In this document: positions 493-55,363 of the stretch, piece by piece
How the letters are laid out: the number at the start of each line of letters is the position of its first letter
How positions within the stretch are numbered: the first letter of the stretch is position 1
Assembly (NCBI RefSeq): GCF_006345805.1
Contig: NC_043005.1
Coordinates: 3,410,001 to 3,474,000, forward strand
DNA length: 64,000 bases
Reading direction: 5' to 3'
From: Octopus sinensis
Lineage: Eukaryota
Notes under the pieces: model-generated
Told to the model about the DNA's origin: nothing
Seen by the model: only the letters and a program-made list of their open reading frames with translations
Databases searched by the model: none
Made by a program: the position numbers and the translations under genes

Positions 493-1766
493 TTAGGTTG
501 GCCAAAAAGTCCGTTTTTTAGGTGAGAATCAAAACAAAGTAAACAATTGTGAAAAATGTATTTAATCAATACAATAGTTACCATTTGCTTCTATAACCTT
601 TCGCCACCTGTTGGGTAGATCTTTAATCCCCTGTTTGAAGAATTTAGGTTCTTTATTAGCAAAAAAAGTTTCCAAGAAAGTTTTCACGTCTTCATCAGAA
701 TTAAAATTTTTTCCATTCAAAGAATTTTGCAGTGACCGAAACAGATGGAAATCTGATGGGACCAGATCTGGAGAGTACGGAGGGTAAGGCAAAACTTCCC
801 ACTCAAGCTGCAGCAACTTCTGCCGAGTAATCAAAGCAGTGTGTGGCCTTGCGTTGTCATGGTGGAAAACAACACCTTTGCCATTCACCAGTTCTGGCTG
901 TTTTTGATGAAGAGCCGTGTTTAATTTATCAGTTGTTCACAATAAACCTCTGAATTGATGGTTTTATTCAAGGGAAGAAGTTCAAACAAGATAACACCCT
1001 TCCAATCCCACCATATCGATAATGGAACTTTCTTCGGATGAAGACCTGCTTTGGATGTTCGTTTTGGAGAATCCCCTGCTTTTTTCCATGATCTTCTTCG
1101 TTTCACATTATTGTAAACTACCCACTTTTCATCCCCAGTTACAATTCTTCTCAAAAAGGGTTCGTTGTTTTCCCTTTTCAGTAATGAATCGCAAATGGAA
1201 ACCCTCTGGACAAGATTTGCTTCTGTCAATTTATGGGGAACCCAAACATCAAGTTTAGAAACGTAACCAAGTTTATACAATTCATTTTCCACACTTGTTT
1301 TGGATATGTTAAGAATATCTGTGATTTGTCTGGTTGTAAGACTGCAGTCTTGTTTGACTACAGCTCTCAGTTGGTTGATGTCAATTTCTTTTTGCCGGTC
1401 AGAGCGAGGTGCATCTCTTACTGAAAAATTCCCTGATCGAAATCGAGCAAGCCGTTTCTGGAACACCTGTTCTGAAACAGCATTCTCTCCATACACATTG
1501 CATAACTTTCGGCAAGTTTCTGTTGCTTTCTTTTTCTGAAGTAAAAAAGCATAAGATGCCGATAGTGCTCCGCCTGGGCTTCCATGTCTAGGCTCAAATG
1601 CAATCAAACAAGTTGCAATCACTCTCCTTTGAGGCTTGTTACACACTGATGTAACCTTGGTCATTATACCGAATACAGTTTCTAAAGAAAAAGAATATCG
1701 GAACAGTGATTAGAAGACCGGACAGTTGATACTAAAAAAAATGAACGGACTTTTTGGCCAACCCAA
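493..1766 (-). mobile_element. Full-length mariner (Tc1/mariner, DD34D; mellifera-like)
   Basis: TIRs TTAGGTTGGCCAAAAAGTCCGTT / AACGGACTTTTTGGCCAACCCAA (1 mismatch), TA on both flanks (491-492, 1767-1768), 1274 bp. Confidence 0.95.
562..1585 (-). pseudogene. Mariner transposase with two single-base frameshifts
   Basis: N-term MEAQAEHYRHLMLFYFRK, WVPHKL, TGDEKW, HHDNARPH, YSPDLVPSD with 34 residues between the 2nd and 3rd Asp; split over three ORFs (breaks near 1530 and 930). Confidence 0.93.
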
Positions 1767-7442: not shown

Positions 7443-7675
<233 letters not shown>

Positions 7676-7903
7676 ATTATATAAAAGGGCTTAGTAAAAT
7701 AAATTACTTTGCCGCATACTGAACTCATTAGAAATAGCAGCTAAAAAACTTTTTTAAAGCTATTTCTAATACTTAACGAAAATCTCTTAACGAAAATTTT
7801 CGTTAAGTATTAGAAATAGCTTTAAAAAAGTTTTTTAGCTGCTATTTCTAATGAGTTCAGTATGCGGCAAAGTAATTTATTTTACTAAGCCCTTTTATAT
7901 AAT
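7676..7903. repeat. Perfect inverted repeat, 108-bp arms, 12-nt spacer
   Basis: 7676-7783 is the exact reverse complement of 7796-7903 (checked by hand). Confidence 0.93.
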
Positions 7904-8310
7904 GTAATAATTTGAATTCGCCTTGAATGGTCCCTTTGCATACTGAACACTTGGTGAAATTGATTAATAATTAATTAATTTTGCCCTCAATTGTTGAAAT
8001 TATATATATATATATATATATACATACATATATATATGCAGGTGTGGCTTTGTGGTAAGAGGCTTGCTTCTGAACAACATGGTGCTGGTTTCAGTCTCAC
8101 TGCGTGGCACCTTGGGCAAGTGTCTTCTACTATAGTGTCAGGCTGACCAAAGTTTCTGAGTGGATTTGGTAGATGGAAACTGAAAGAAGCCCATCGTGTA
8201 TATATATATAAACCCTCCTTCCCTTCTTTCCTGAGCGTCAAATAATACTTTAATTGTTCCATGTCCTCGCGTTGCTGTGTTTTTTCCTGTGTTTTCTTGT
8301 TTGGATTAAC

Positions 8311-8350: not shown

Positions 8351-8690
8351 TCTCTATATATATAAAACTGAGAATGTGTGTCTGTCTGTGTGTTTCCCTA
8401 AAACTTGAGAACTACATAACCAATTTCATTCAAATTTTACATATGCCTTACTTAGGGTCCATGTAGTTTCATGGGCAAAAAAAATGTTCAACTTCTTGCC
8501 TAGGGCGAGCCCATAGCAATATCATATCTTCTCCACTACGATTCCCTAAAACTTGAGAACTACACAACCAATTTCATTCAAATTTTACACATGCCTTACT
8601 TAGGGTCCATGTAGTTTCATGGGCAAAAAAAATGTTCAACTTCTTGCCTAGGGCGAGCCCATAGCAATATCATATCTTCTCCACTATTTC
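8351..8690 (+). mobile_element. Non-autonomous Helitron-like 5' segment containing a 148-bp-period tandem duplication
   Basis: A|TC start followed by TATATAAAACTGAGAATGTGTGTCTGTCTG, typical of Helitron 5' ends; 8394-8538 repeated at 8542-8686 with two T/C differences. Confidence 0.55.
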
Positions 8691-14687: not shown

Positions 14688-14796
14688 GTTTGTTGTGTTC
14701 CTGTAATGAATGTACAAACACAAACACATGTAATACAACAGGGGTCTGCTATGCACTCATGACGCGGAGAAAACAGGGCAAGAAACTTATCTATAA
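14688..14796 (+). CDS. TGFBR1: TGF-beta/activin type I receptor, ectodomain exon A (phase 1 to 2)
   Basis: Polypyrimidine tract TTTACAG acceptor, AA|GTGAGT donor; LLCSCNECTNTNTCNTTGVCY holds the first 5 Cys of the ectodomain. Confidence 0.85.
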
Positions 14797-24374: not shown

Positions 24375-24596
24375 ATTCTATTGGCATTTAAAGCAGTCAT
24401 ATGCGGGCCAAATACTTGTTTTATGTTCAACCCAACTGGTTCTGGCCTCTCACACCTACCCTACAATGTCATTCTAAAACTGTACAATCACATCATTGAA
24501 ATCTCAAAGCTCCAAGATAATCCATGGCTAATTCAAAAGAATACGAATAAATCAGCATTACAGTTGAGAGAGTAAACTGAATGCTAAACAGTTAAG
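24375..24596. mobile_element. piggyBac-type MITE
   Basis: Same family as 12694-12925; ends CTGAATGCTAAACAGTTAA. Confidence 0.55.
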
Positions 24597-24686
24597 CGGG
24601 TTCCTCAACTCTCTCTTTCTTGCTTATAATTCCCCTCTTTATCTGTCTGTCTCTTTTATTTTGAGTACTTTCCTTCTTTTGTTTAG

Positions 24687-24838
24687 TTGCCATCATAAGC
24701 CAGTGCCCAAAGATCGACCGTTTTTCTGTGAGAACAGTAATGTACGAAAGTATGACTGGAACATATCTTGTTGCTCGGACTCTGCATTTTGCAACAAAAA
24801 ACTCCACCCTGTTCTTGAACCATACAAACCAGATCCTT
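24687..24838 (+). CDS. TGFBR1: Type I receptor ectodomain exon B (phase 2 to 1)
   Basis: TTTAG acceptor, T|GTAAGT donor; PKDRPFFC (cf. ALK5 PRDRPFVC) and Cys box CCSDSAFCN. Confidence 0.92.
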
Positions 24839-24898
24839 GTAAGTATTGTCAGATCTTGAAATATTTTTGGACAGTTTATTTACAGAACATTTTTTTAC

Positions 24899-25178
24899 TT
24901 GCAGTGTGGGAGGTGTTTATAAGTCATTTAAAAACACACAAAAGCCGTTAGATTCACTTCAACATTTAAATTTAATTTGCCAAAATATTTTCATGACGAA
25001 AGAAGCCGCAACCTGTTCACTGACAAAATTGCATGCTGCAGCATGGAATTTTGTCAGTGAACAGGTTGCGGCTTCTTTCGTCATGAAAATATTTTGGCAA
25101 ATTAAATTTAAATGTTGAAGTGAATCTAACGGCTTTTGTGTGTTTTTAAATGACTTATAAACACCTCCCACACTGCAA
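24899..25178. repeat. 280-bp palindrome (140-bp arms, no spacer, one mismatch)
   Basis: Centre 25038/25039 within CATGCTGCAGCATG; only mismatch is G25031/G25046; mirrored ORFs on both strands in the ORF track. Confidence 0.95.
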
Positions 25179-25245
25179 TTGTTTTTGTTTCAGCACACGA
25201 TCTCAGATCAGGTCATTTGCTATGCAAGTACATCTCTGTAATATA

Positions 25246-25386
25246 TTAGGTTGTCCCAAAAGTTCGTAAACACTTGCGAAAATTGAATTTTTACTCGCCA
25301 AGTACTAATAAAAACAACAAAAATTATTCCTCAAAATAAAGACCATTATTTTCCAAGACTTTCTACAAACTTTTGGGACAACCTTA
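25246..25386. mobile_element. Mariner-derived MITE (~140 bp)
   Basis: TIRs TTAGGTTGTCCCAAAAGTT / AACTTTTGGGACAACCTTA, TA flanks. Confidence 0.8.
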
Positions 25387-25417
25387 TATATTATATTATA
25401 TATGTGTGTGTGTGTGG

Positions 25418-25593
25418 AACATAAAAAGCACCCACTACACTCACGGAGTGGTTGGCGTTAGGAAGGGCATCCAGCTGTAGAAATACTGCCAGATCAGACT
25501 GGAGCCTGGTGCAGCCATCTGGCTTCCCAGACCCTGGTCAAACCGTCCAACCCATGCTAGCATGGAAAACGGACGTTAAATGATGATGATGAT
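25418..25593 (+). mobile_element. RTE-LINE 3' end
   Basis: Terminal hairpin and (ATG)n tail. Confidence 0.85.
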
Positions 25594-25603
25594 ATATATA
25601 TAT

Positions 25604-25665
<62 letters not shown>

Positions 25666-27715: not shown

Positions 27716-27731
27716 TACTTGTTCGTTACAG

Positions 27732-27953
27732 CAAGAAGTGGATCTGAAGGAATGGACCTAACTAATACCGTAGTCATCACAATATGTGTTGGAGTGATCC
27801 TTCTGTTGCTGCTTATTGCATTCATCTACTTCTGCCAACGCCGGTCACAGATCTACTTGCCTGCTAACTCCACAGTTGACCGCTTCCAGGCCATGCAATG
27901 TGGCAGTCTGAGAAGTCTTATTGAAGACTGGTCCCCTTCTGGTTCCGGTTCAG
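27732..27953 (+). CDS. TGFBR1: Type I receptor exon C: transmembrane helix and start of GS domain (phase 1 to 1)
   Basis: TTACAG acceptor, G|GTCAGT donor; VVITICVGVILLLLLIAFIYFC then SPSGSGS. Confidence 0.93.
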
Positions 27954-28425
27954 GTCAGTTTGGACATTTTTGATGTTTTATTCTTCGTTGTTGATAGTAT
28001 TTATGATGATGCTGATGGTGATGATAGTCATCATCATCATCAGCATTATCATTATTGCTATTTGTGTATGTGTACTCTCCACAAACACCACCACCACCAC
28101 CACCACCACCAACATATCCAGCTGTAGAATCCGTGCCGTAACTGACATTTGGCACTTGCTGCAGCTCCTGTCAAACTGTCCAACCCATGCCAGCATGGAA
28201 AAATGGATGTTAAATGATGATGTAATTTGTAGTTTTGGTGTGTCTGTGTGTGTCACATGTATATGTAATTGTATGTGTAGTGTGTATGTTTGTGTGTAAT
28301 ATATGTATTTGCGTGTGTGTAAGGGTAGGCAGCAGGCATTGTCACGTGGCTAAGAAGTTTGTGTCTCCTATTAGAGCCTCGAAACTGGAAATGGTTGGCA
28401 GAAACAGTTTGGAAAGCCATAGTGA

Positions 28426-32570: not shown

Positions 32571-33559
32571 ATCAGAATTTAATCGCTCCCTGAAATTTTC
32601 CATCCTAATCTTTTGGTAGTTACTATAGTGTTAGAGCGTCATCTTCCATTAGGTTGCCTGGGTAACAAAAGCTATCAACAACTACTGTGGAGTCTTCTAA
32701 TCACTGAAAAATATTTCATCTCACTGATGTTTAACTGAATAAATATATTATCATTTATTTCATTTCAATTGTTTTGTTCACCTAAAATTCTTCAAGGCAG
32801 TGCCCCAGCATGGTCACAGTCTAATGAGTGAAACCTTGCCAGATCAGACTGGGGCCTGGTGCAGCCTTCTGGCTTGCCAGTCCTCAGTCAAACCGTCCAA
32901 CCCATGCCAGCGTGGAAAGTGGACGTTAAATGATGTTGACAATGATGATGATGATTATTATTATTACTGTTGATGGGCATTCCAAGTGTTAGAAATAGTA
33001 GAGCAACAAGTAAAATGCCTGGTGGTAGTTACATTCCTTTACATTCTCAGTTATTATTACTAGTAAATCCACCTGTCTACGATGGAGGCATAACACGAGG
33101 GAAGGAAGTCATAACAGCAGTATGTATTGAGAAATGTGTAAACGGACTTTGATAGATTACTGGGTGATGTCTCAGAGAAATCACATTGTTGTTGGTGATA
33201 CAGCATTCTATTGCAGCTGTATGGCATGTGTTTGCGACTAAGGGAGATGTGATGACGATTCACTCCCAAACTGAAATAGGCTCCCAGCCCCTGTATCATG
33301 AATGGTTATGTGGACCACTCCTAATAAAAGCCAGAACTTTCTTCGACCACTACATAAAAAGTATTAAGAGAAAAATGTTATTTAGATATACTTTTATTTT
33401 AGTTGTTTACACTATTTTACGCTTGTTTATACTCTTACACATTCAAAGTTCACAAAGTTCCTTATTTAAATTATGAACTGTATTCCTTTCAATAATAATA
33501 TGATTACAAAACTTCTTTGTAGATGATATTTTCTGTTTGGTTGATACTAATTTTCACAT

Positions 33560-35630: not shown

Positions 35631-35732
35631 TCTCCCTTACAACTTTGTGCCCATTTACCAATGATACCAGATGCTGTTGTAAATAAATTTCTCAATCTGA
35701 TATTAAAACAAAAAACGTTTTCTCTTTTTCAG

Positions 35733-35900
35733 ATGATGGTACCTGGACTCAATTGTGGTTGGTTACTGATTATCACGAAAATGGTTCACTTTATGATTTT
35801 TTAAACAAGAATGTTATTACAAAACAAGATTTGATCAAAATAGCCCTTTCAATTGCTTGTGGTTTGGCTCATTTGCATATGCAGATATTAGGGGTACAAG
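35733..35900 (+). CDS. TGFBR1: Type I receptor exon E: L45 loop to subdomain VIa (168 nt; absent from ORF track)
   Basis: TTTTCAG acceptor, G|GTAAGT donor; [25 protein letters not shown]...[13 protein letters not shown]. Confidence 0.97.
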
Positions 35901-35933
35901 GTAAGTGTGAACTACACTGATATCTGAAACTGG

Positions 35934-37751: not shown

Positions 37752-38457
37752 ATTTTATTCTTTTATTTGTTTCAGTCATTTGACTGCGGCCATGCTGGAG
37801 CACCGCCTTTAGTTGAGCAAATTGACCCCAGGACTTATTCTTTGTAAGCCTAGTACTTATTCTATCGGTCTCTCTTGCCGAACTGCTAAGTGACGGGGAC
37901 GTAAACACACCAGCATCGGTTGCCAAATAATGTTGGGGGGGCAAACACAGACACACAAACATATACATCATCATCATCATCATCGTTTAACGTCCGTTCT
38001 CCATGCTAGCATGGGTTGGACGGTTCGACCGGGGTTCTGGGAAGCCAGAAGGCTGCACCAGGCTCCAGTCTAATCTGGCAATGTTTCTACAGCTGGATGC
38101 CCTTCCTAACGCCAACCACTCCGTGAGTGTAGTGGGTGCTTTTTACGTGCCACCTGCACAGGTGCCAGGCGAGGCTGGCAACGGCCACGGTCGGATTGGT
38201 GTATTTTATGTGCCACCGGCACGGAAGCCAGTCGAGGCGGTGCTGGCATCGGCCACGAGTCGGATAGTGCTTTTTACGTACCACCAGACCAGGGATCCTG
38301 GCTGGTTCAATTCGGTTTCGATTTCGCTTGCCCCAACATGTCTTCGCAAGCAGGGGGGGTTGGCATGGGTGTCTGTCGTCGGATGAAGTTCTATATCGAC
38401 TTCGCTTGCCTCAACAGGTCTTTGTGTCCAAGGGAGGAAAGGCATTCATATACATGC

Positions 38458-53716: not shown

Positions 53717-53907
53717 ATATATATATGTATGTATATATGTGTATGTATGTATATATATGTGTATGGATGTATATATATATGTATGTATATATATGTGTAT
53801 GTATGTATATATGTGTATGTATGTATATATATGTGTATGGATGTATATATATATGTATGTATATATATGTGTATGTATGTATATATATGTGTATGTATGT
53901 ATATATG

Positions 53908-53958
<51 letters not shown>

Positions 53959-53974
53959 ATATATATATGTATGT

Positions 53975-54014
<40 letters not shown>

Positions 54015-54019
54015 GTATA

Positions 54020-54052
<33 letters not shown>

Positions 54053-54085
54053 TAATATATATATATATGTATGTATATATGTATG

Positions 54086-54116
<31 letters not shown>

Positions 54117-54185
54117 ATATATATATATAGATGTATGTATATATATATATATATATATGTATGTATATATATATATATATATATG

Positions 54186-54224
<39 letters not shown>

Positions 54225-54267
54225 ATATATATAATATATGTATGTATATTATATATATATATGTATG

Positions 54268-54325
<58 letters not shown>

Positions 54326-54682
54326 TATGTATATATATATGTATGTATATATATATGTATGTATATATATATGTATGTATATATATATGTATGTATATAT
54401 ATATATGTATGTATATAATATATATATGTATGTATATATATATGTATGTATATATATATATATATGTATATATATATGTATGTATATATATATATGTATG
54501 TATATATATATGTATGTATATATATATATGTATGTATATATATATATATATGTATATATATATGTATGTATATATATATGTATGTATATATATATATGTA
54601 TGTATATATATATGTATGTATATATATATGTATGTGTATATATATATGTGTATATATATATGTATGTATATATATATGTATG

Positions 54683-54718
<36 letters not shown>

Positions 54719-54874
54719 TATATATATTATGTATGTATATATATATATATATATATGTATGTATATATATATGTATGTATATATATATGTATGTATATAT
54801 ATATATGTATGTATATATATATATATATATGTATGTATATATATAATATATGTATGTATATGTATATATATATC

Positions 54875-54907
<33 letters not shown>

Positions 54908-54938
54908 GTATATATGTATGTATATGTATATATGTATG

Positions 54939-54987
<49 letters not shown>

Positions 54988-55045
54988 TATGTATATGTAT
55001 ATATATATTATGTATATGTATGTATATGTATATATATATATAATG

Positions 55046-55088
<43 letters not shown>

Positions 55089-55248
55089 GTATGTATATAT
55101 ATATATATGGTATATATATATGTATAGTATATATATATATATATATATATATGTTATGTATATATATATATATATGTATGTGTATGTATGTATATATATA
55201 TATATATATATGTATGTTATATATATATATATATGTATATGTATATAT

Positions 55249-55282
<34 letters not shown>

Positions 55283-55320
55283 GTATATGTATAATATATG
55301 TATATATATATATATGTATG

Positions 55321-55363
<43 letters not shown>

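What the first reader, a model, noticed from the sequence alone, without database searches (positions are those of the whole stretch)
24899..25178. Near-perfect 140-bp hairpin 60 nt downstream of the exon B 5' splice site
This is a spacerless 280-bp palindrome with a single G-G mismatch. In the receptor pre-mRNA it would form 140 bp of almost continuous dsRNA immediately after the exon that encodes the ligand-binding Cys box. That is an ideal ADAR or Dicer (endo-siRNA/hpRNA) substrate and a possible modulator of exon B splicing or editing. Such palindromes are unstable in DNA, so it is either recent, selected or an artefact; the internal mismatch argues slightly against a simple read fold-back.
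Basis: partly seen in the sequence, partly recalled or inferred. Interest (0 to 1): 0.7.

Follow-up and report, generated by a model that had tools for sequence, protein, structure and literature searches.

The report
Ancient intronic palindrome in octopus TGFBR1
A real 280-bp near-perfect palindrome sits in an intron of an octopus TGF-beta receptor gene, has been there for at least about 34 million years, and has most likely been kept near-perfect in one lineage by its two arms copying each other, so it is a tidy example of a known kind rather than a new regulatory device.

Summary
Arms 24899-25038 and 25039-25178 are 140 nt each with no spacer and one G/G mismatch (25031/25046). The palindrome starts 60 nt after the 5' splice site of the exon encoding the CCSDSAFCN box of a TGF-beta type I receptor.

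The window is Octopus sinensis (GCA_006345805.1). The palindrome lies at the orthologous intron position in independent assemblies of O. vulgaris (ONT) and O. bimaculoides. It is therefore neither an assembly artefact nor recent: it predates a split dated at about 34 Mya.

- **O. bimaculoides:** it has decayed at roughly the neutral rate, to 104-nt arms that are 91% complementary around a degenerate 55-nt centre with a 16-nt deletion.
- **O. sinensis and O. vulgaris:** it stayed near-perfect.
- **Gene conversion:** a complex 8-nt variant, present only in the right arm of O. vulgaris, is mirrored exactly in the left arm of O. sinensis. Point mutation plus selection cannot do this; arm-to-arm gene conversion can.

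As RNA the palindrome would form a 140-bp duplex (-257 kcal/mol). That is a plausible ADAR hyper-editing substrate, of a type unusually common in octopus. I found no pairing with exon B, no Rfam family membership and no equivalent hairpin in Argonauta. Published work reports that molluscs lack the endo-siRNA machinery. How the palindrome arose is unresolved.

The parts
24688..24838 (+). Exon 3 ('exon B') of the TGF-beta type I receptor gene; encodes the CCSDSAFCN cysteine box of the ligand-binding ectodomain
   Evidence: Splice signals read; tblastn of XP_029640841.1 (P0121); Pfam Activin_recp over residues 26-98
24839..24898 (+). First 60 nt of intron 3, from GTAAGT to the base of the hairpin; 56/60 identical in O. 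bimaculoides
24899..25038 (+). Left arm of the palindrome (140 nt)
   Evidence: orthologues at L004 68479-68617 and L002 32346-~32477
25039..25178 (+). Right arm of the palindrome (140 nt); its outer 99 nt differ from O. bimaculoides at only 4 positions
25036..25041 (.). CTGCAG at the exact centre of symmetry, a short natural palindrome. All three species share the same centre point
25031..25046 (.). The only mismatched pair (G25031 / G25046). It is shared with O. vulgaris, and O. bimaculoides has C-G here, so the left-arm G is derived and older than the sinensis/vulgaris split
24995..25002 (+). GACGAAAG in the left arm: the 8-nt block that in O. sinensis mirrors the right arm. O. vulgaris left arm and both O. 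bimaculoides arms carry the ancestral CAC-TTTG / CGC-TTTG form. This is the gene-conversion tract
25075..25082 (+). CTTTCGTC in the right arm: the donor of the converted block, a derived state shared by O. sinensis and O. vulgaris
27731..27955 (+). Exon 4 (transmembrane segment and GS motif); marks the 3' end of the 2.9-kb intron that carries the palindrome
32741..32755 (+). AAATATATTATCATT: the empty target site in O. sinensis (and O. vulgaris) where O. bimaculoides carries a 64-nt copy of the arm's outer end flanked by a 15-bp duplication of this sequence

Best explanation
This is a genuine, old DNA palindrome in intron 3 of the octopus TGFBR1/baboon-type receptor gene.

Shown:
- It existed, with the same centre point and the same outer ends, before O. 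bimaculoides split from the O. vulgaris/O. sinensis lineage, a split dated at about 34 Mya.
- In O. bimaculoides it then decayed like neutral intron DNA. Single-arm substitutions accumulated and a 16-nt deletion next to the centre turned the middle into a 55-nt imperfect spacer.
- In the vulgaris/sinensis lineage the arms evolved in concert. Two single-base changes are present in both arms. A complex 8-nt replacement that arose in the right arm before the sinensis/vulgaris split has been copied into the left arm in O. sinensis only.

Inferred:
- The near-perfection seen in the window is maintained by intrachromosomal arm-to-arm gene conversion, not by recency and not necessarily by selection.
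- The palindrome arose once by a strand-switch or fold-back join at a short self-complementary motif (CTGCAG). Such a join automatically gives equal arms and no spacer.
- When the gene is transcribed, the 280 nt fold into a self-contained 140-bp duplex. Like the very many inverted repeats in octopus transcripts, this duplex would be promiscuously deaminated by ADAR and removed with the intron, with no specific effect on exon B.
For: - **Identity and independence.** Window positions 1-47894 are 100% identical to GCA_006345805.1 CM016867.1. The orthologous loci come from GCA_951406725.2 (O. vulgaris; ONT, NextDenovo, Hypo polishing) and GCA_001194135.2 (O. bimaculoides).
- **Presence in each species.** Window 24400-25624 aligns collinearly to L004 at 98.6% and 24401-25246 to L002 at 91%, and both alignments include the palindrome. 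The inverted-repeat finder gives arms of 99 nt (99%) plus 37 nt (97%) in O. vulgaris, and 104-nt arms (91%) with 55 nt between them in O. bimaculoides.
- **Pair table.** Watson-Crick pairs number 139/140 in O. sinensis and 134/140 in O. vulgaris. In O. bimaculoides there are 106, plus 7 G-U, 11 mismatches and 16 gapped positions.
- **Gene conversion.** The O. vulgaris left arm reads CATCAC-TTTGAAGC, identical to the reverse complement of the O. bimaculoides right arm, so this form is ancestral. The right arm of both O. vulgaris and O. sinensis reads as the complement of CATGACGAAAGAAGC. Only the O. sinensis left arm also reads CATGACGAAAGAAGC. Double-sided changes occur at arm positions 7 and 26 (C-G in O. 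bimaculoides, T-A in O. sinensis and O. vulgaris).
- **Neutral yardstick.** Mismatch columns in collinear aligned blocks are about 6.6% between O. sinensis and O. bimaculoides and about 0.8% between O. sinensis and O. vulgaris. The 9% arm-to-arm divergence in O. bimaculoides is about what unconstrained arms would reach. The 0.7% in O. sinensis is far below that.
- **RNA potential.** MFE is -256.9 kcal/mol, z = -36.7. Octopus is the strongest hyper-editor surveyed, and its long near-perfect dsRNA loci are unusually frequent (PMC5625713).
- **No link to the exon.**
Against: - No reads, RNA-seq or small-RNA data could be examined, so editing and neutrality are inferences.
- In O. bimaculoides, 6 of the 9 non-Watson-Crick positions in the outer 99 bp are G-U on the sense strand. 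The right arm's outer 99 nt are more conserved than the background (4 differences). Both are weak hints, statistically unconvincing, that RNA pairing could matter.
- The O. sinensis-specific 8-nt homogenisation rests on a single assembly. In principle it could be a consensus or polishing error.
- The origin is unresolved. No target-site duplication flanks the palindrome, yet its outer 64 nt were mobilised in O. bimaculoides. That fits a mobile-element terminus better than an arbitrary duplication breakpoint.
Confidence: 0.62

Rival explanations
1. The hairpin is a functional RNA element of the receptor pre-mRNA, for example tuning use of the nearby 5' splice site, recruiting ADAR, or setting the fate of the intron. 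On this view its pairing is kept by natural selection.
For: - It has been retained at the same position, 60 nt from the splice site, in three species spanning about 34 My.
- In O. bimaculoides, 6 of the 9 non-Watson-Crick positions in the outer stem are G-U on the sense strand, so the RNA stem stays largely intact.
- The right arm's outer 99 nt differ at 4 positions, against about 6.6% background.
Against: - The 8-nt complex variant mirrored in the other arm cannot arise by compensatory point mutation.
- A 6:2 split of G-U to A-C is not significant (one-sided binomial p about 0.14; my arithmetic).
- The left arm diverges faster than the background (12/99), and the centre has collapsed in O. 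bimaculoides.
- There is no complementarity to exon B and no alternative exon.
- Argonauta hians has no hairpin after this exon.
Confidence: 0.12
2. On origin: the palindrome is a copy of a mobile element whose terminus is the outer end of the arm, not a one-off local inverted duplication. Candidates are a fold-back or MITE-like DNA transposon, or a head-to-head dimer of the 3' end of a non-LTR retroelement or SINE.
For: - In O. bimaculoides a 64-nt piece starting exactly at the arm's outer end (within 2 nt) is inserted 5 kb downstream with a perfect 15-bp target-site duplication. The site is empty in O. sinensis and O. vulgaris. A 15-bp duplication is typical of target-primed reverse transcription (general knowledge).
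- The same gene holds a second near-perfect hairpin, found in O. sinensis but not in O. vulgaris (7673-7906), and a mariner MITE next to the palindrome. Hairpin-type insertions are therefore ongoing in this genome.
Against: - No target-site duplication of any standard length flanks the palindrome (flanks ...TTTTTTTAC and TTGTTTTTG...).
- blastn and an nhmmer profile of the arms find no other copy in about 250 kb of octopus DNA, whereas the local SINE occurs more than 10 times.
- The extra O. bimaculoides copy shares two states (A12, A46) with that species' own left arm, so it may simply be a copy of this locus.
- There is no tRNA-like or Rfam signal.
Confidence: 0.3
3. It is a hairpin-RNA (endo-siRNA) or microRNA-type gene processed by Dicer.
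For: The shape is that of a long perfect hairpin within a transcribed region. Rfam long-hairpin plant MIR models align to it on structure alone.
Against: - All Rfam hits are far below their gathering scores (for example MIR821, 144.7 against 249 bits) and match both strands equally.
- Molluscs are reported to lack Dicer-2 and siRNA-class Argonaute, and a mollusc small-RNA library lacked an endo-siRNA signature (PMC11114477).
- A 140-bp perfect stem is not a canonical Drosha substrate (general knowledge).
Confidence: 0.03
4. It is an assembly artefact, from a fold-back or chimeric long read or a missed adapter.
For: Spacerless perfect palindromes are a known signature of such artefacts, and the window comes from a PacBio-based assembly (citing Li et al. 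2020).
Against: - The same palindrome, with the same flanks, is in an ONT-based O. vulgaris assembly, and in diverged form in the O. bimaculoides assembly.
- Both flanks are unique and collinear with the orthologues.
- There are no N runs in the window or near L002 32346-32608.
Confidence: 0.01

Closest known systems
Large palindromes and inverted repeats homogenised by arm-to-arm gene conversion (human and ape Y-chromosome palindromes P1-P8; plastid inverted repeats)
   Same: Arm-to-arm identity (99.3%) far exceeds the identity of either arm to its orthologue in a species that split after the palindrome formed. A multi-base variant has been copied from one arm to the other, and some changes are present on both arms.
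   Different: It is three to four orders of magnitude smaller (0.28 kb against 9 kb to 1.45 Mb arms), has no spacer, carries no genes, and lies inside an intron. Conversion is seen in one lineage only, while the sister lineage decays.
Palindromic AT-rich repeats (PATRR11, PATRR22, and PATRR17 in an NF1 intron) of humans
   Same: It is a near-perfect, spacerless palindrome a few hundred bp long, in non-coding and in one case intronic DNA. It persists across related species, and the centre is prone to asymmetric deletions that stabilise it, as seen here in O. bimaculoides.
   Different: It is only 65% A+T and its centre is not AT-rich (60%). No evidence of polymorphism, breakage or translocation could be sought here. 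This comparison is from memory of the literature and was not tested.
Intronic inverted repeats as ADAR hyper-editing substrates (inverted Alu pairs in primates; palindromic Harbinger repeats in Xenopus; inverted repeats in octopus, PMC5625713)
   Same: It is a long, nearly perfect intramolecular duplex inside a pre-mRNA, in the animal with the strongest hyper-editing signal reported.
   Different: It is a single-copy spacerless palindrome, not two neighbouring copies of a high-copy repeat. Editing at this locus has not been observed.
Fold-back elements and MITEs (for example mariner-derived MADE1, which gave rise to mir-548)
   Same: The whole unit is two inverted terminal halves. A genuine mariner MITE sits 60 nt downstream (25239-25393), and a second hairpin-type insertion found in O. 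sinensis but not O. vulgaris lies in intron 1.
   Different: No target-site duplication was found and no family was detected in about 250 kb. The ends (TTGCAG...) are not followed by TA as in Tc1/mariner.
Drosophila hpRNA loci (endo-siRNA hairpins)
   Same: It has a long perfect hairpin shape.
   Different: The host phylum lacks the Dicer-2/AGO2 pathway (PMC11114477). The hairpin is intronic and no target gene is known.

Membership tests
Palindrome under arm-to-arm gene conversion (concerted evolution) | The arms are more alike within a species than either arm is to its orthologue in a species that diverged after the palindrome formed | tested here: met
   O. sinensis arms match at 139/140. 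O. sinensis against O. bimaculoides shows 12/99 differences in the left arm and 4/99 in the right (outer part), with more in the centre.
Palindrome under arm-to-arm gene conversion (concerted evolution) | A complex variant present in one arm in one species appears as an exact mirror in the other arm in a sister species | tested here: met
   The 8-nt block is GACGAAAG (24995-25002) paired with CTTTCGTC (25075-25082). The O. vulgaris left arm and both O. bimaculoides arms keep the CAC-TTTG / CGC-TTTG form. It rests on one assembly per species.
Palindrome under arm-to-arm gene conversion (concerted evolution) | Substitutions are fixed on both arms together | tested here: met
   Arm positions 7 and 26 (and 135) are C-G or G-C in O. 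bimaculoides and T-A or A-T in O. sinensis and O. vulgaris.
MITE / fold-back DNA transposon | A target-site duplication flanks the element | tested here: not met
   The flanks are ...TTTTTTTAC | TTGCAG...CTGCAA | TTGTTTTTG in all three species. No direct repeat of 2-10 bp abuts both ends, and there is no TA or TTAA.
MITE / fold-back DNA transposon | Multiple dispersed copies exist in the genome | tested here: inconclusive
   Only about 250 kb of octopus DNA could be searched. It held no further copy except a 64-nt fragment in O. bimaculoides. A metagenome scan gave 0 hits.
MITE / fold-back DNA transposon | An empty orthologous site exists in a related species | tested here: inconclusive
   The site is filled in all three alignable Octopus species. 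The Argonauta hians intron is not alignable beyond 8 nt.
MicroRNA precursor families (Rfam) | Score at or above a family's gathering threshold | tested here: not met
   The best hit is MIR821 at 144.7 bits against a threshold of 249. All others are also below threshold, are plant long-hairpin models, and hit both strands.
hpRNA / endo-siRNA locus | The host has a Dicer-2 and siRNA-class Argonaute pathway, and 21-nt small RNAs map to both arms | not testable with these tools
   Literature only. Dicer-2 and siAGO were not found in Mollusca, and no endo-siRNA signature was seen in C. gigas libraries (PMC11114477). No octopus small-RNA data were available here.
ADAR hyper-editing substrate | A long, nearly perfect intramolecular duplex lies within a transcribed region | tested here: met
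   There are 139 of 140 pairs and the MFE is -256.9 kcal/mol. The duplex lies inside intron 3 of an annotated, conserved gene.
ADAR hyper-editing substrate | Clusters of A-to-G mismatches in RNA reads from the arms | not testable with these tools
   No RNA-seq access.
Editing-site complementary sequence (ECS) for exon B | An intronic sequence pairs with the exon to form the editing duplex | tested here: not met
   The longest exact reverse-complement match between the exon and the region 21.5-27.8 kb is 10 nt (E = 0.68). Exon-arm duplex energies of -34 and -42 kcal/mol lie within the shuffled range of -38.6 +/- 5.1.
PATRR-type palindromic AT-rich repeat | A spacerless near-perfect palindrome of a few hundred bp with a very AT-rich composition | tested here: inconclusive
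   The geometry is met. The composition is only 65% A+T, and 60% in the central 40 nt.

The most novel reading that the evidence does not exclude
The hairpin may be a selected RNA structure of the TGFBR1 pre-mRNA, kept for more than 34 My at a fixed distance from the 5' splice site of the ligand-binding exon. Gene conversion would then be the means by which pairing is restored, not a neutral by-product. A more speculative extension follows from the 64-nt copy in O. bimaculoides, which starts exactly at the hairpin base and carries a 15-bp target-site duplication. The excised hairpin might survive as a discrete RNA whose end-defined fragment can be reverse-transcribed and re-inserted.
Probability: 0.08. 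Interest if true: 0.6.

Novelty: new member of a known kind. Interest (0 to 1): 0.3.

Why it matters
For the receptor gene it probably matters little. The element is most likely a passenger that is spliced out and, in octopus, heavily deaminated.

Its value is as a small, clean natural experiment in palindrome biology. The same spacerless 280-bp palindrome can be followed in three genomes. In one lineage it shows the textbook decay route: single-arm substitutions plus an asymmetric deletion next to the centre. In the other it is kept almost perfect by arm-to-arm conversion, with one conversion tract caught between two species only about 2.5 My apart.

This shows that long perfect palindromes, often dismissed as assembly errors or assumed to be recent, can persist for tens of millions of years in an animal germ line. 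It also gives a concrete locus for testing hyper-editing and cruciform-related instability in cephalopods.

Tried and rejected
- **Spurious ORF as a protein query.** I searched with the ORF that runs across the palindrome (24846-25118) to find independent assemblies. There were no candidates.
- **Short concatenated receptor query.** A 190-aa query returned no cephalopod hit; every hit was 332 aa or shorter. A 472-aa concatenation of the exons was needed.
- **Other copies of the arm.** I found none in the window (blastn). In all fetched octopus loci, blastn and an nhmmer profile found only the 64-nt O. bimaculoides fragment. A scan of JGI metagenome contigs with a 26-mer gave 0 hits.
- **Target-site duplications.** I looked for TA, TTAA, 3-bp, 8-bp and 9-bp duplications around the palindrome and found none. 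The start CAGTGTGGGA recalled, from memory, Tc1/Tc3-type ends, but the flanking dinucleotides are TG/CA rather than TA, so I did not pursue this.
- **tRNA-derived SINE head.** Weak A-box and B-box resemblance suggested one. ARAGORN found nothing in the arms or in the O. bimaculoides copy, and Rfam gave only noise.
- **miRNA family membership.** Rejected: all hits are sub-threshold and structure-only.
- **Exon B to intron pairing (ECS idea).** Rejected.
- **Mutually exclusive copies of exon B, as in insect baboon.** tblastn of the full protein on the 78-kb locus finds this exon only once, and the two O. vulgaris isoforms differ only in their first exon.
- **Positional conservation in Argonauta hians.** The intron is not alignable and has no hairpin near the exon.
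- **Source of the 8-nt right-arm change.** I could not derive it from a simple inversion or a quasi-palindrome template switch, so it is left as a complex substitution.

Full report
**1.

The inverted-repeat finder reports arms 24899-25038 and 25039-25178, 140 nt each, 99% complementary, with no bases between them. A base-by-base check finds one non-complementary pair, G25031 against G25046, 8 nt from the centre. Symmetry stops at 24898 C / 25179 T.

The centre is CTGCAG (25036-25041). The arms are 35% G+C. Folded as RNA with its flanks, the region gives one uninterrupted stem with an MFE of -256.9 kcal/mol. One hundred dinucleotide shuffles give -82.7 +/- 4.8, so z = -36.7.

The upstream exon ends at 24838 with GTAAGT following, so the palindrome starts after exactly 60 intronic nucleotides.

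**2. Where we are**

Homology mapping places a TGF-beta type I receptor gene on the + strand:
- Ectodomain exons end at 14794 and 24838.
- The transmembrane/GS exon is 27731-27955.
- Six kinase exons lie between 31844 and 45891.

A search with the concatenated exons gives three top hits: Octopus sinensis XP_029640841.1 (97%, the shortfall coming from my crude exon joins), Argonauta hians (88%) and O. bimaculoides (84%). The genomic locus of the O. sinensis protein is 100% identical to window 1-47894. The window is therefore GCA_006345805.1 CM016867.1:3,410,001-3,474,000.

Pfam confirms Activin_recp, TGF_beta_GS and kinase domains. The exon next to the palindrome encodes the CCSDSAFCN box within the Activin_recp match. 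tblastn of the full protein finds this exon only once in the 78-kb locus, and the two O. vulgaris isoforms differ only in exon 1.

**3. It is neither an artefact nor recent**

I fetched the orthologous loci of O. vulgaris (GCA_951406725.2, L004), O. bimaculoides (GCA_001194135.2, L002) and Argonauta hians (L003). Window 24400-25624 aligns collinearly to O. vulgaris at 98.6%, and 24401-25246 aligns to O. bimaculoides at 91%. Both alignments run through the palindrome with the same flanks.

The O. vulgaris assembly was made from ONT reads (NextDenovo, Hypo polishing). The O. sinensis assembly is cited as PacBio plus Hi-C (PMC10700109). The same paper gives about 34 Mya for the split of O. bimaculoides from the vulgaris/sinensis clade and about 2.5 Mya for sinensis against vulgaris. 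The palindrome, with its centre and ends already in place, is therefore older than about 34 My. There are no N runs near it in any of the loci.

**4. How the three versions differ**

| Species | State of the palindrome | Watson-Crick pairs |
|---|---|---|
| O. sinensis | 140-nt arms, one mismatch | 139/140 |
| O. vulgaris | Same central G/G mismatch, plus an internal bubble where the left arm reads CATCAC-TTTGAAGC and the right arm pairs as CATGACGAAAGAAGC | 134/140 |
| O. bimaculoides | 104-nt arms, 91% complementary, separated by 55 nt; the right arm has lost 16 nt next to the centre and the remaining centre pairs poorly | 106, plus 7 G-U, 11 mismatches, 16 gapped |

Mismatch columns in collinear aligned blocks of this locus are about 6.6% (O. 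sinensis against O. bimaculoides) and about 0.8% (O. sinensis against O. vulgaris). The blocks were not filtered for exons or repeats. Two arms drifting independently since the O. bimaculoides split should differ by roughly 6-7%. O. bimaculoides shows 9% in the outer stem, which is about neutral. O. sinensis shows 0.7%.

**5. Why the arms stayed alike: gene conversion**

Aligning all six arms, with right arms reverse-complemented, shows the following:
- The form CATCAC-TTTGAAGC occurs in the O. vulgaris left arm and the O. bimaculoides right arm. The O. bimaculoides left arm carries a further-diverged version of the same form (TGTCGC-TTTGAG). This form is therefore ancestral for both arms.
- The right arm acquired a complex replacement (C to G, one inserted base, TTT to AAA) before the sinensis/vulgaris split.
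- In O. sinensis alone, the left arm now carries the exact mirror of that replacement: 24995-25002 GACGAAAG against 25075-25082 CTTTCGTC.

An identical eight-base complex change cannot be reached by independent point mutation under selection for pairing. It is what copying one arm from the other produces.

Two further positions (7 and 26 from the outer end) are C-G in O. bimaculoides and T-A in both arms of O. sinensis and O. vulgaris. Most 'O. bimaculoides-specific' differences lie in its left arm: 12 against 4 in the outer 99 nt. This asymmetry is expected if left-right differences already existed at the split and the vulgaris/sinensis left arm was later overwritten by the right arm, the same direction as the 8-nt tract.

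One caveat applies. The O. sinensis state rests on a single assembly. A polishing error is conceivable, though long reads spanning 280 bp make it unlikely.

The asymmetric deletion beside the centre in O. bimaculoides is the classic way long palindromes become stable (established knowledge from work on bacterial, yeast and mouse palindromes, not tested here).

**6. What it would do as RNA**

The duplex is self-contained. Neither arm nor any sequence within about 3 kb is complementary to exon 3 beyond chance. The longest exact match is 10 nt, and duplex energies lie within shuffled controls. It cannot therefore serve as an editing-site complementary sequence for the exon.

All Rfam matches are below their gathering scores. 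They are plant long-hairpin MIR models hitting both strands on shape alone.

The Dicer/hpRNA idea is weakened by a phylum-wide survey. It found no Dicer-2 and no siRNA-class Argonaute in Mollusca, and no endo-siRNA signature in a mollusc small-RNA library (PMC11114477).

By contrast, octopus has the strongest hyper-editing signal among 21 surveyed metazoans, and an unusually high fraction of loci able to form long near-perfect dsRNA (PMC5625713). ADAR hyper-editing of this intronic duplex is therefore the expected fate, and is ordinary for this genome. That is inference, because no RNA data could be examined.

Argonauta hians, a more distant octopod, has no hairpin after this exon and its intron is unalignable. 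This gives no sign of deep positional conservation.

Two weak hints point the other way. In O. bimaculoides, 6 of the 9 non-Watson-Crick positions in the outer stem are G-U on the sense strand (not significant). The right arm is also somewhat more conserved than the background.

**7. Origin: unresolved**

The centre of symmetry is a natural short palindrome (CTGCAG). A strand switch or the annealing of two like-stranded ends at such a motif automatically yields equal arms and no spacer. This is my inferred mechanism, and it does not say what was duplicated.

Evidence against a transposon copy:
- No target-site duplication of any standard length flanks the palindrome.
- No other copy turned up in about 250 kb of octopus DNA by blastn or a profile search, although the local SINE appears more than ten times.
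- A metagenome scan found nothing.
- Tests for tRNA-like features were negative.

Evidence for a mobile terminus comes from O. bimaculoides. Five kb downstream it carries a 64-nt copy that begins, within 2 nt, at the arm's outer end. It is flanked by a perfect 15-bp duplication of AAATATATTATCATT. The site is empty in O. sinensis (32741-32755) and O. vulgaris. A duplication of that length is typical of target-primed reverse transcription (general knowledge).

The copy shares two states with the O. bimaculoides left arm (A12, A46). It could therefore derive from this very locus rather than from a dispersed family.

**8. Context**

The window holds a second near-perfect hairpin (7673-7783 / 7796-7906, 99%, 12-nt spacer). 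It lies in intron 1 of the same gene, within a stretch that O. vulgaris lacks. A mariner-type MITE (25239-25393) and a SINE (25407-25593) sit just downstream of the palindrome. O. bimaculoides lacks both, while O. vulgaris carries the MITE and the adjoining SINE region aligns collinearly there. Hairpin-forming insertions are thus routine here.

**9. Verdict**

- The dilemma 'recent, selected or artefact' is resolved by a fourth option: the palindrome is old and homogenised by gene conversion.
- The regulatory readings are unsupported, and the Dicer one is unlikely.
- I file it as a new member of known kinds: an intronic inverted repeat that is a putative ADAR substrate, and a small palindrome under concerted evolution. 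It has modest interest as a well-resolved example of long-term palindrome persistence and decay.

Noticed in passing
window 7673-7783 / 7796-7906: A second near-perfect hairpin (111-nt arms, 99% complementary, 12-nt spacer) lies in intron 1 of the same receptor gene, embedded in TA/ATG microsatellite. O. vulgaris lacks the stretch 7570-8000 at the orthologous place, so it looks like an insertion in O. sinensis since the split from O. vulgaris. It is unrelated in sequence to the 24899-25178 palindrome.
   Followed up: partly
L002 (O. bimaculoides) 37753-37846; empty site at window 32741-32755: A 64-nt copy of the outer end of the palindrome arm (GTAGCGTGGAAGG...CACTTCCG) is inserted with a perfect 15-bp target-site duplication AAATATATTATCATT. 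The site is empty in O. sinensis and O. vulgaris. A duplication of this length suggests reverse-transcriptase-mediated insertion, and the source (this locus or a family) is unknown.
   Followed up: partly
window 25239-25393 and 25407-25593: A mariner-type MITE (30-nt terminal inverted repeats, TTAGGTTGTCCCAAAAGTT...; weak sub-threshold Rfam mir-548-like hit) is followed by a copy of the abundant octopus SINE. O. vulgaris carries the MITE, and the SINE region aligns collinearly there. O. bimaculoides has only (TA)n at this point.
   Followed up: partly
window 921-1664 (- strand): A 247-aa ORF with Pfam HTH_48 and Transposase_1 (partial DDE) matches: a truncated Mos1-type mariner transposase, plausibly the autonomous relative of the MITE at 25239-25393.
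   Followed up: partly
L002 38662-40194 (O. bimaculoides); window 35732-35905: The O. bimaculoides protein model (443 aa, named 'activin receptor type-1') lacks the kinase exon DDGTWTQLW...ILGVQ. A 1.5-kb run of N lies between the flanking aligned blocks, where that exon would sit. This points to an annotation and assembly gap rather than a biological difference.
   Followed up: partly
window 53717-55358: A 1.6-kb imperfect (AT)n / (TATG-type) microsatellite block drops G+C to 17.5% over 54-56 kb and generates many spurious inverted repeats and ORFs.
   Followed up: no
window 24688-24838 (exon 3), codon for V in ...NSNVRKY...: The O. vulgaris protein has A (NSNARKY) where O. sinensis and O. 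bimaculoides have V. [quoted passage not shown]
   Followed up: no
window 8394-8686: A 148-bp unit is duplicated in tandem at 98% identity in intron 1.
   Followed up: no
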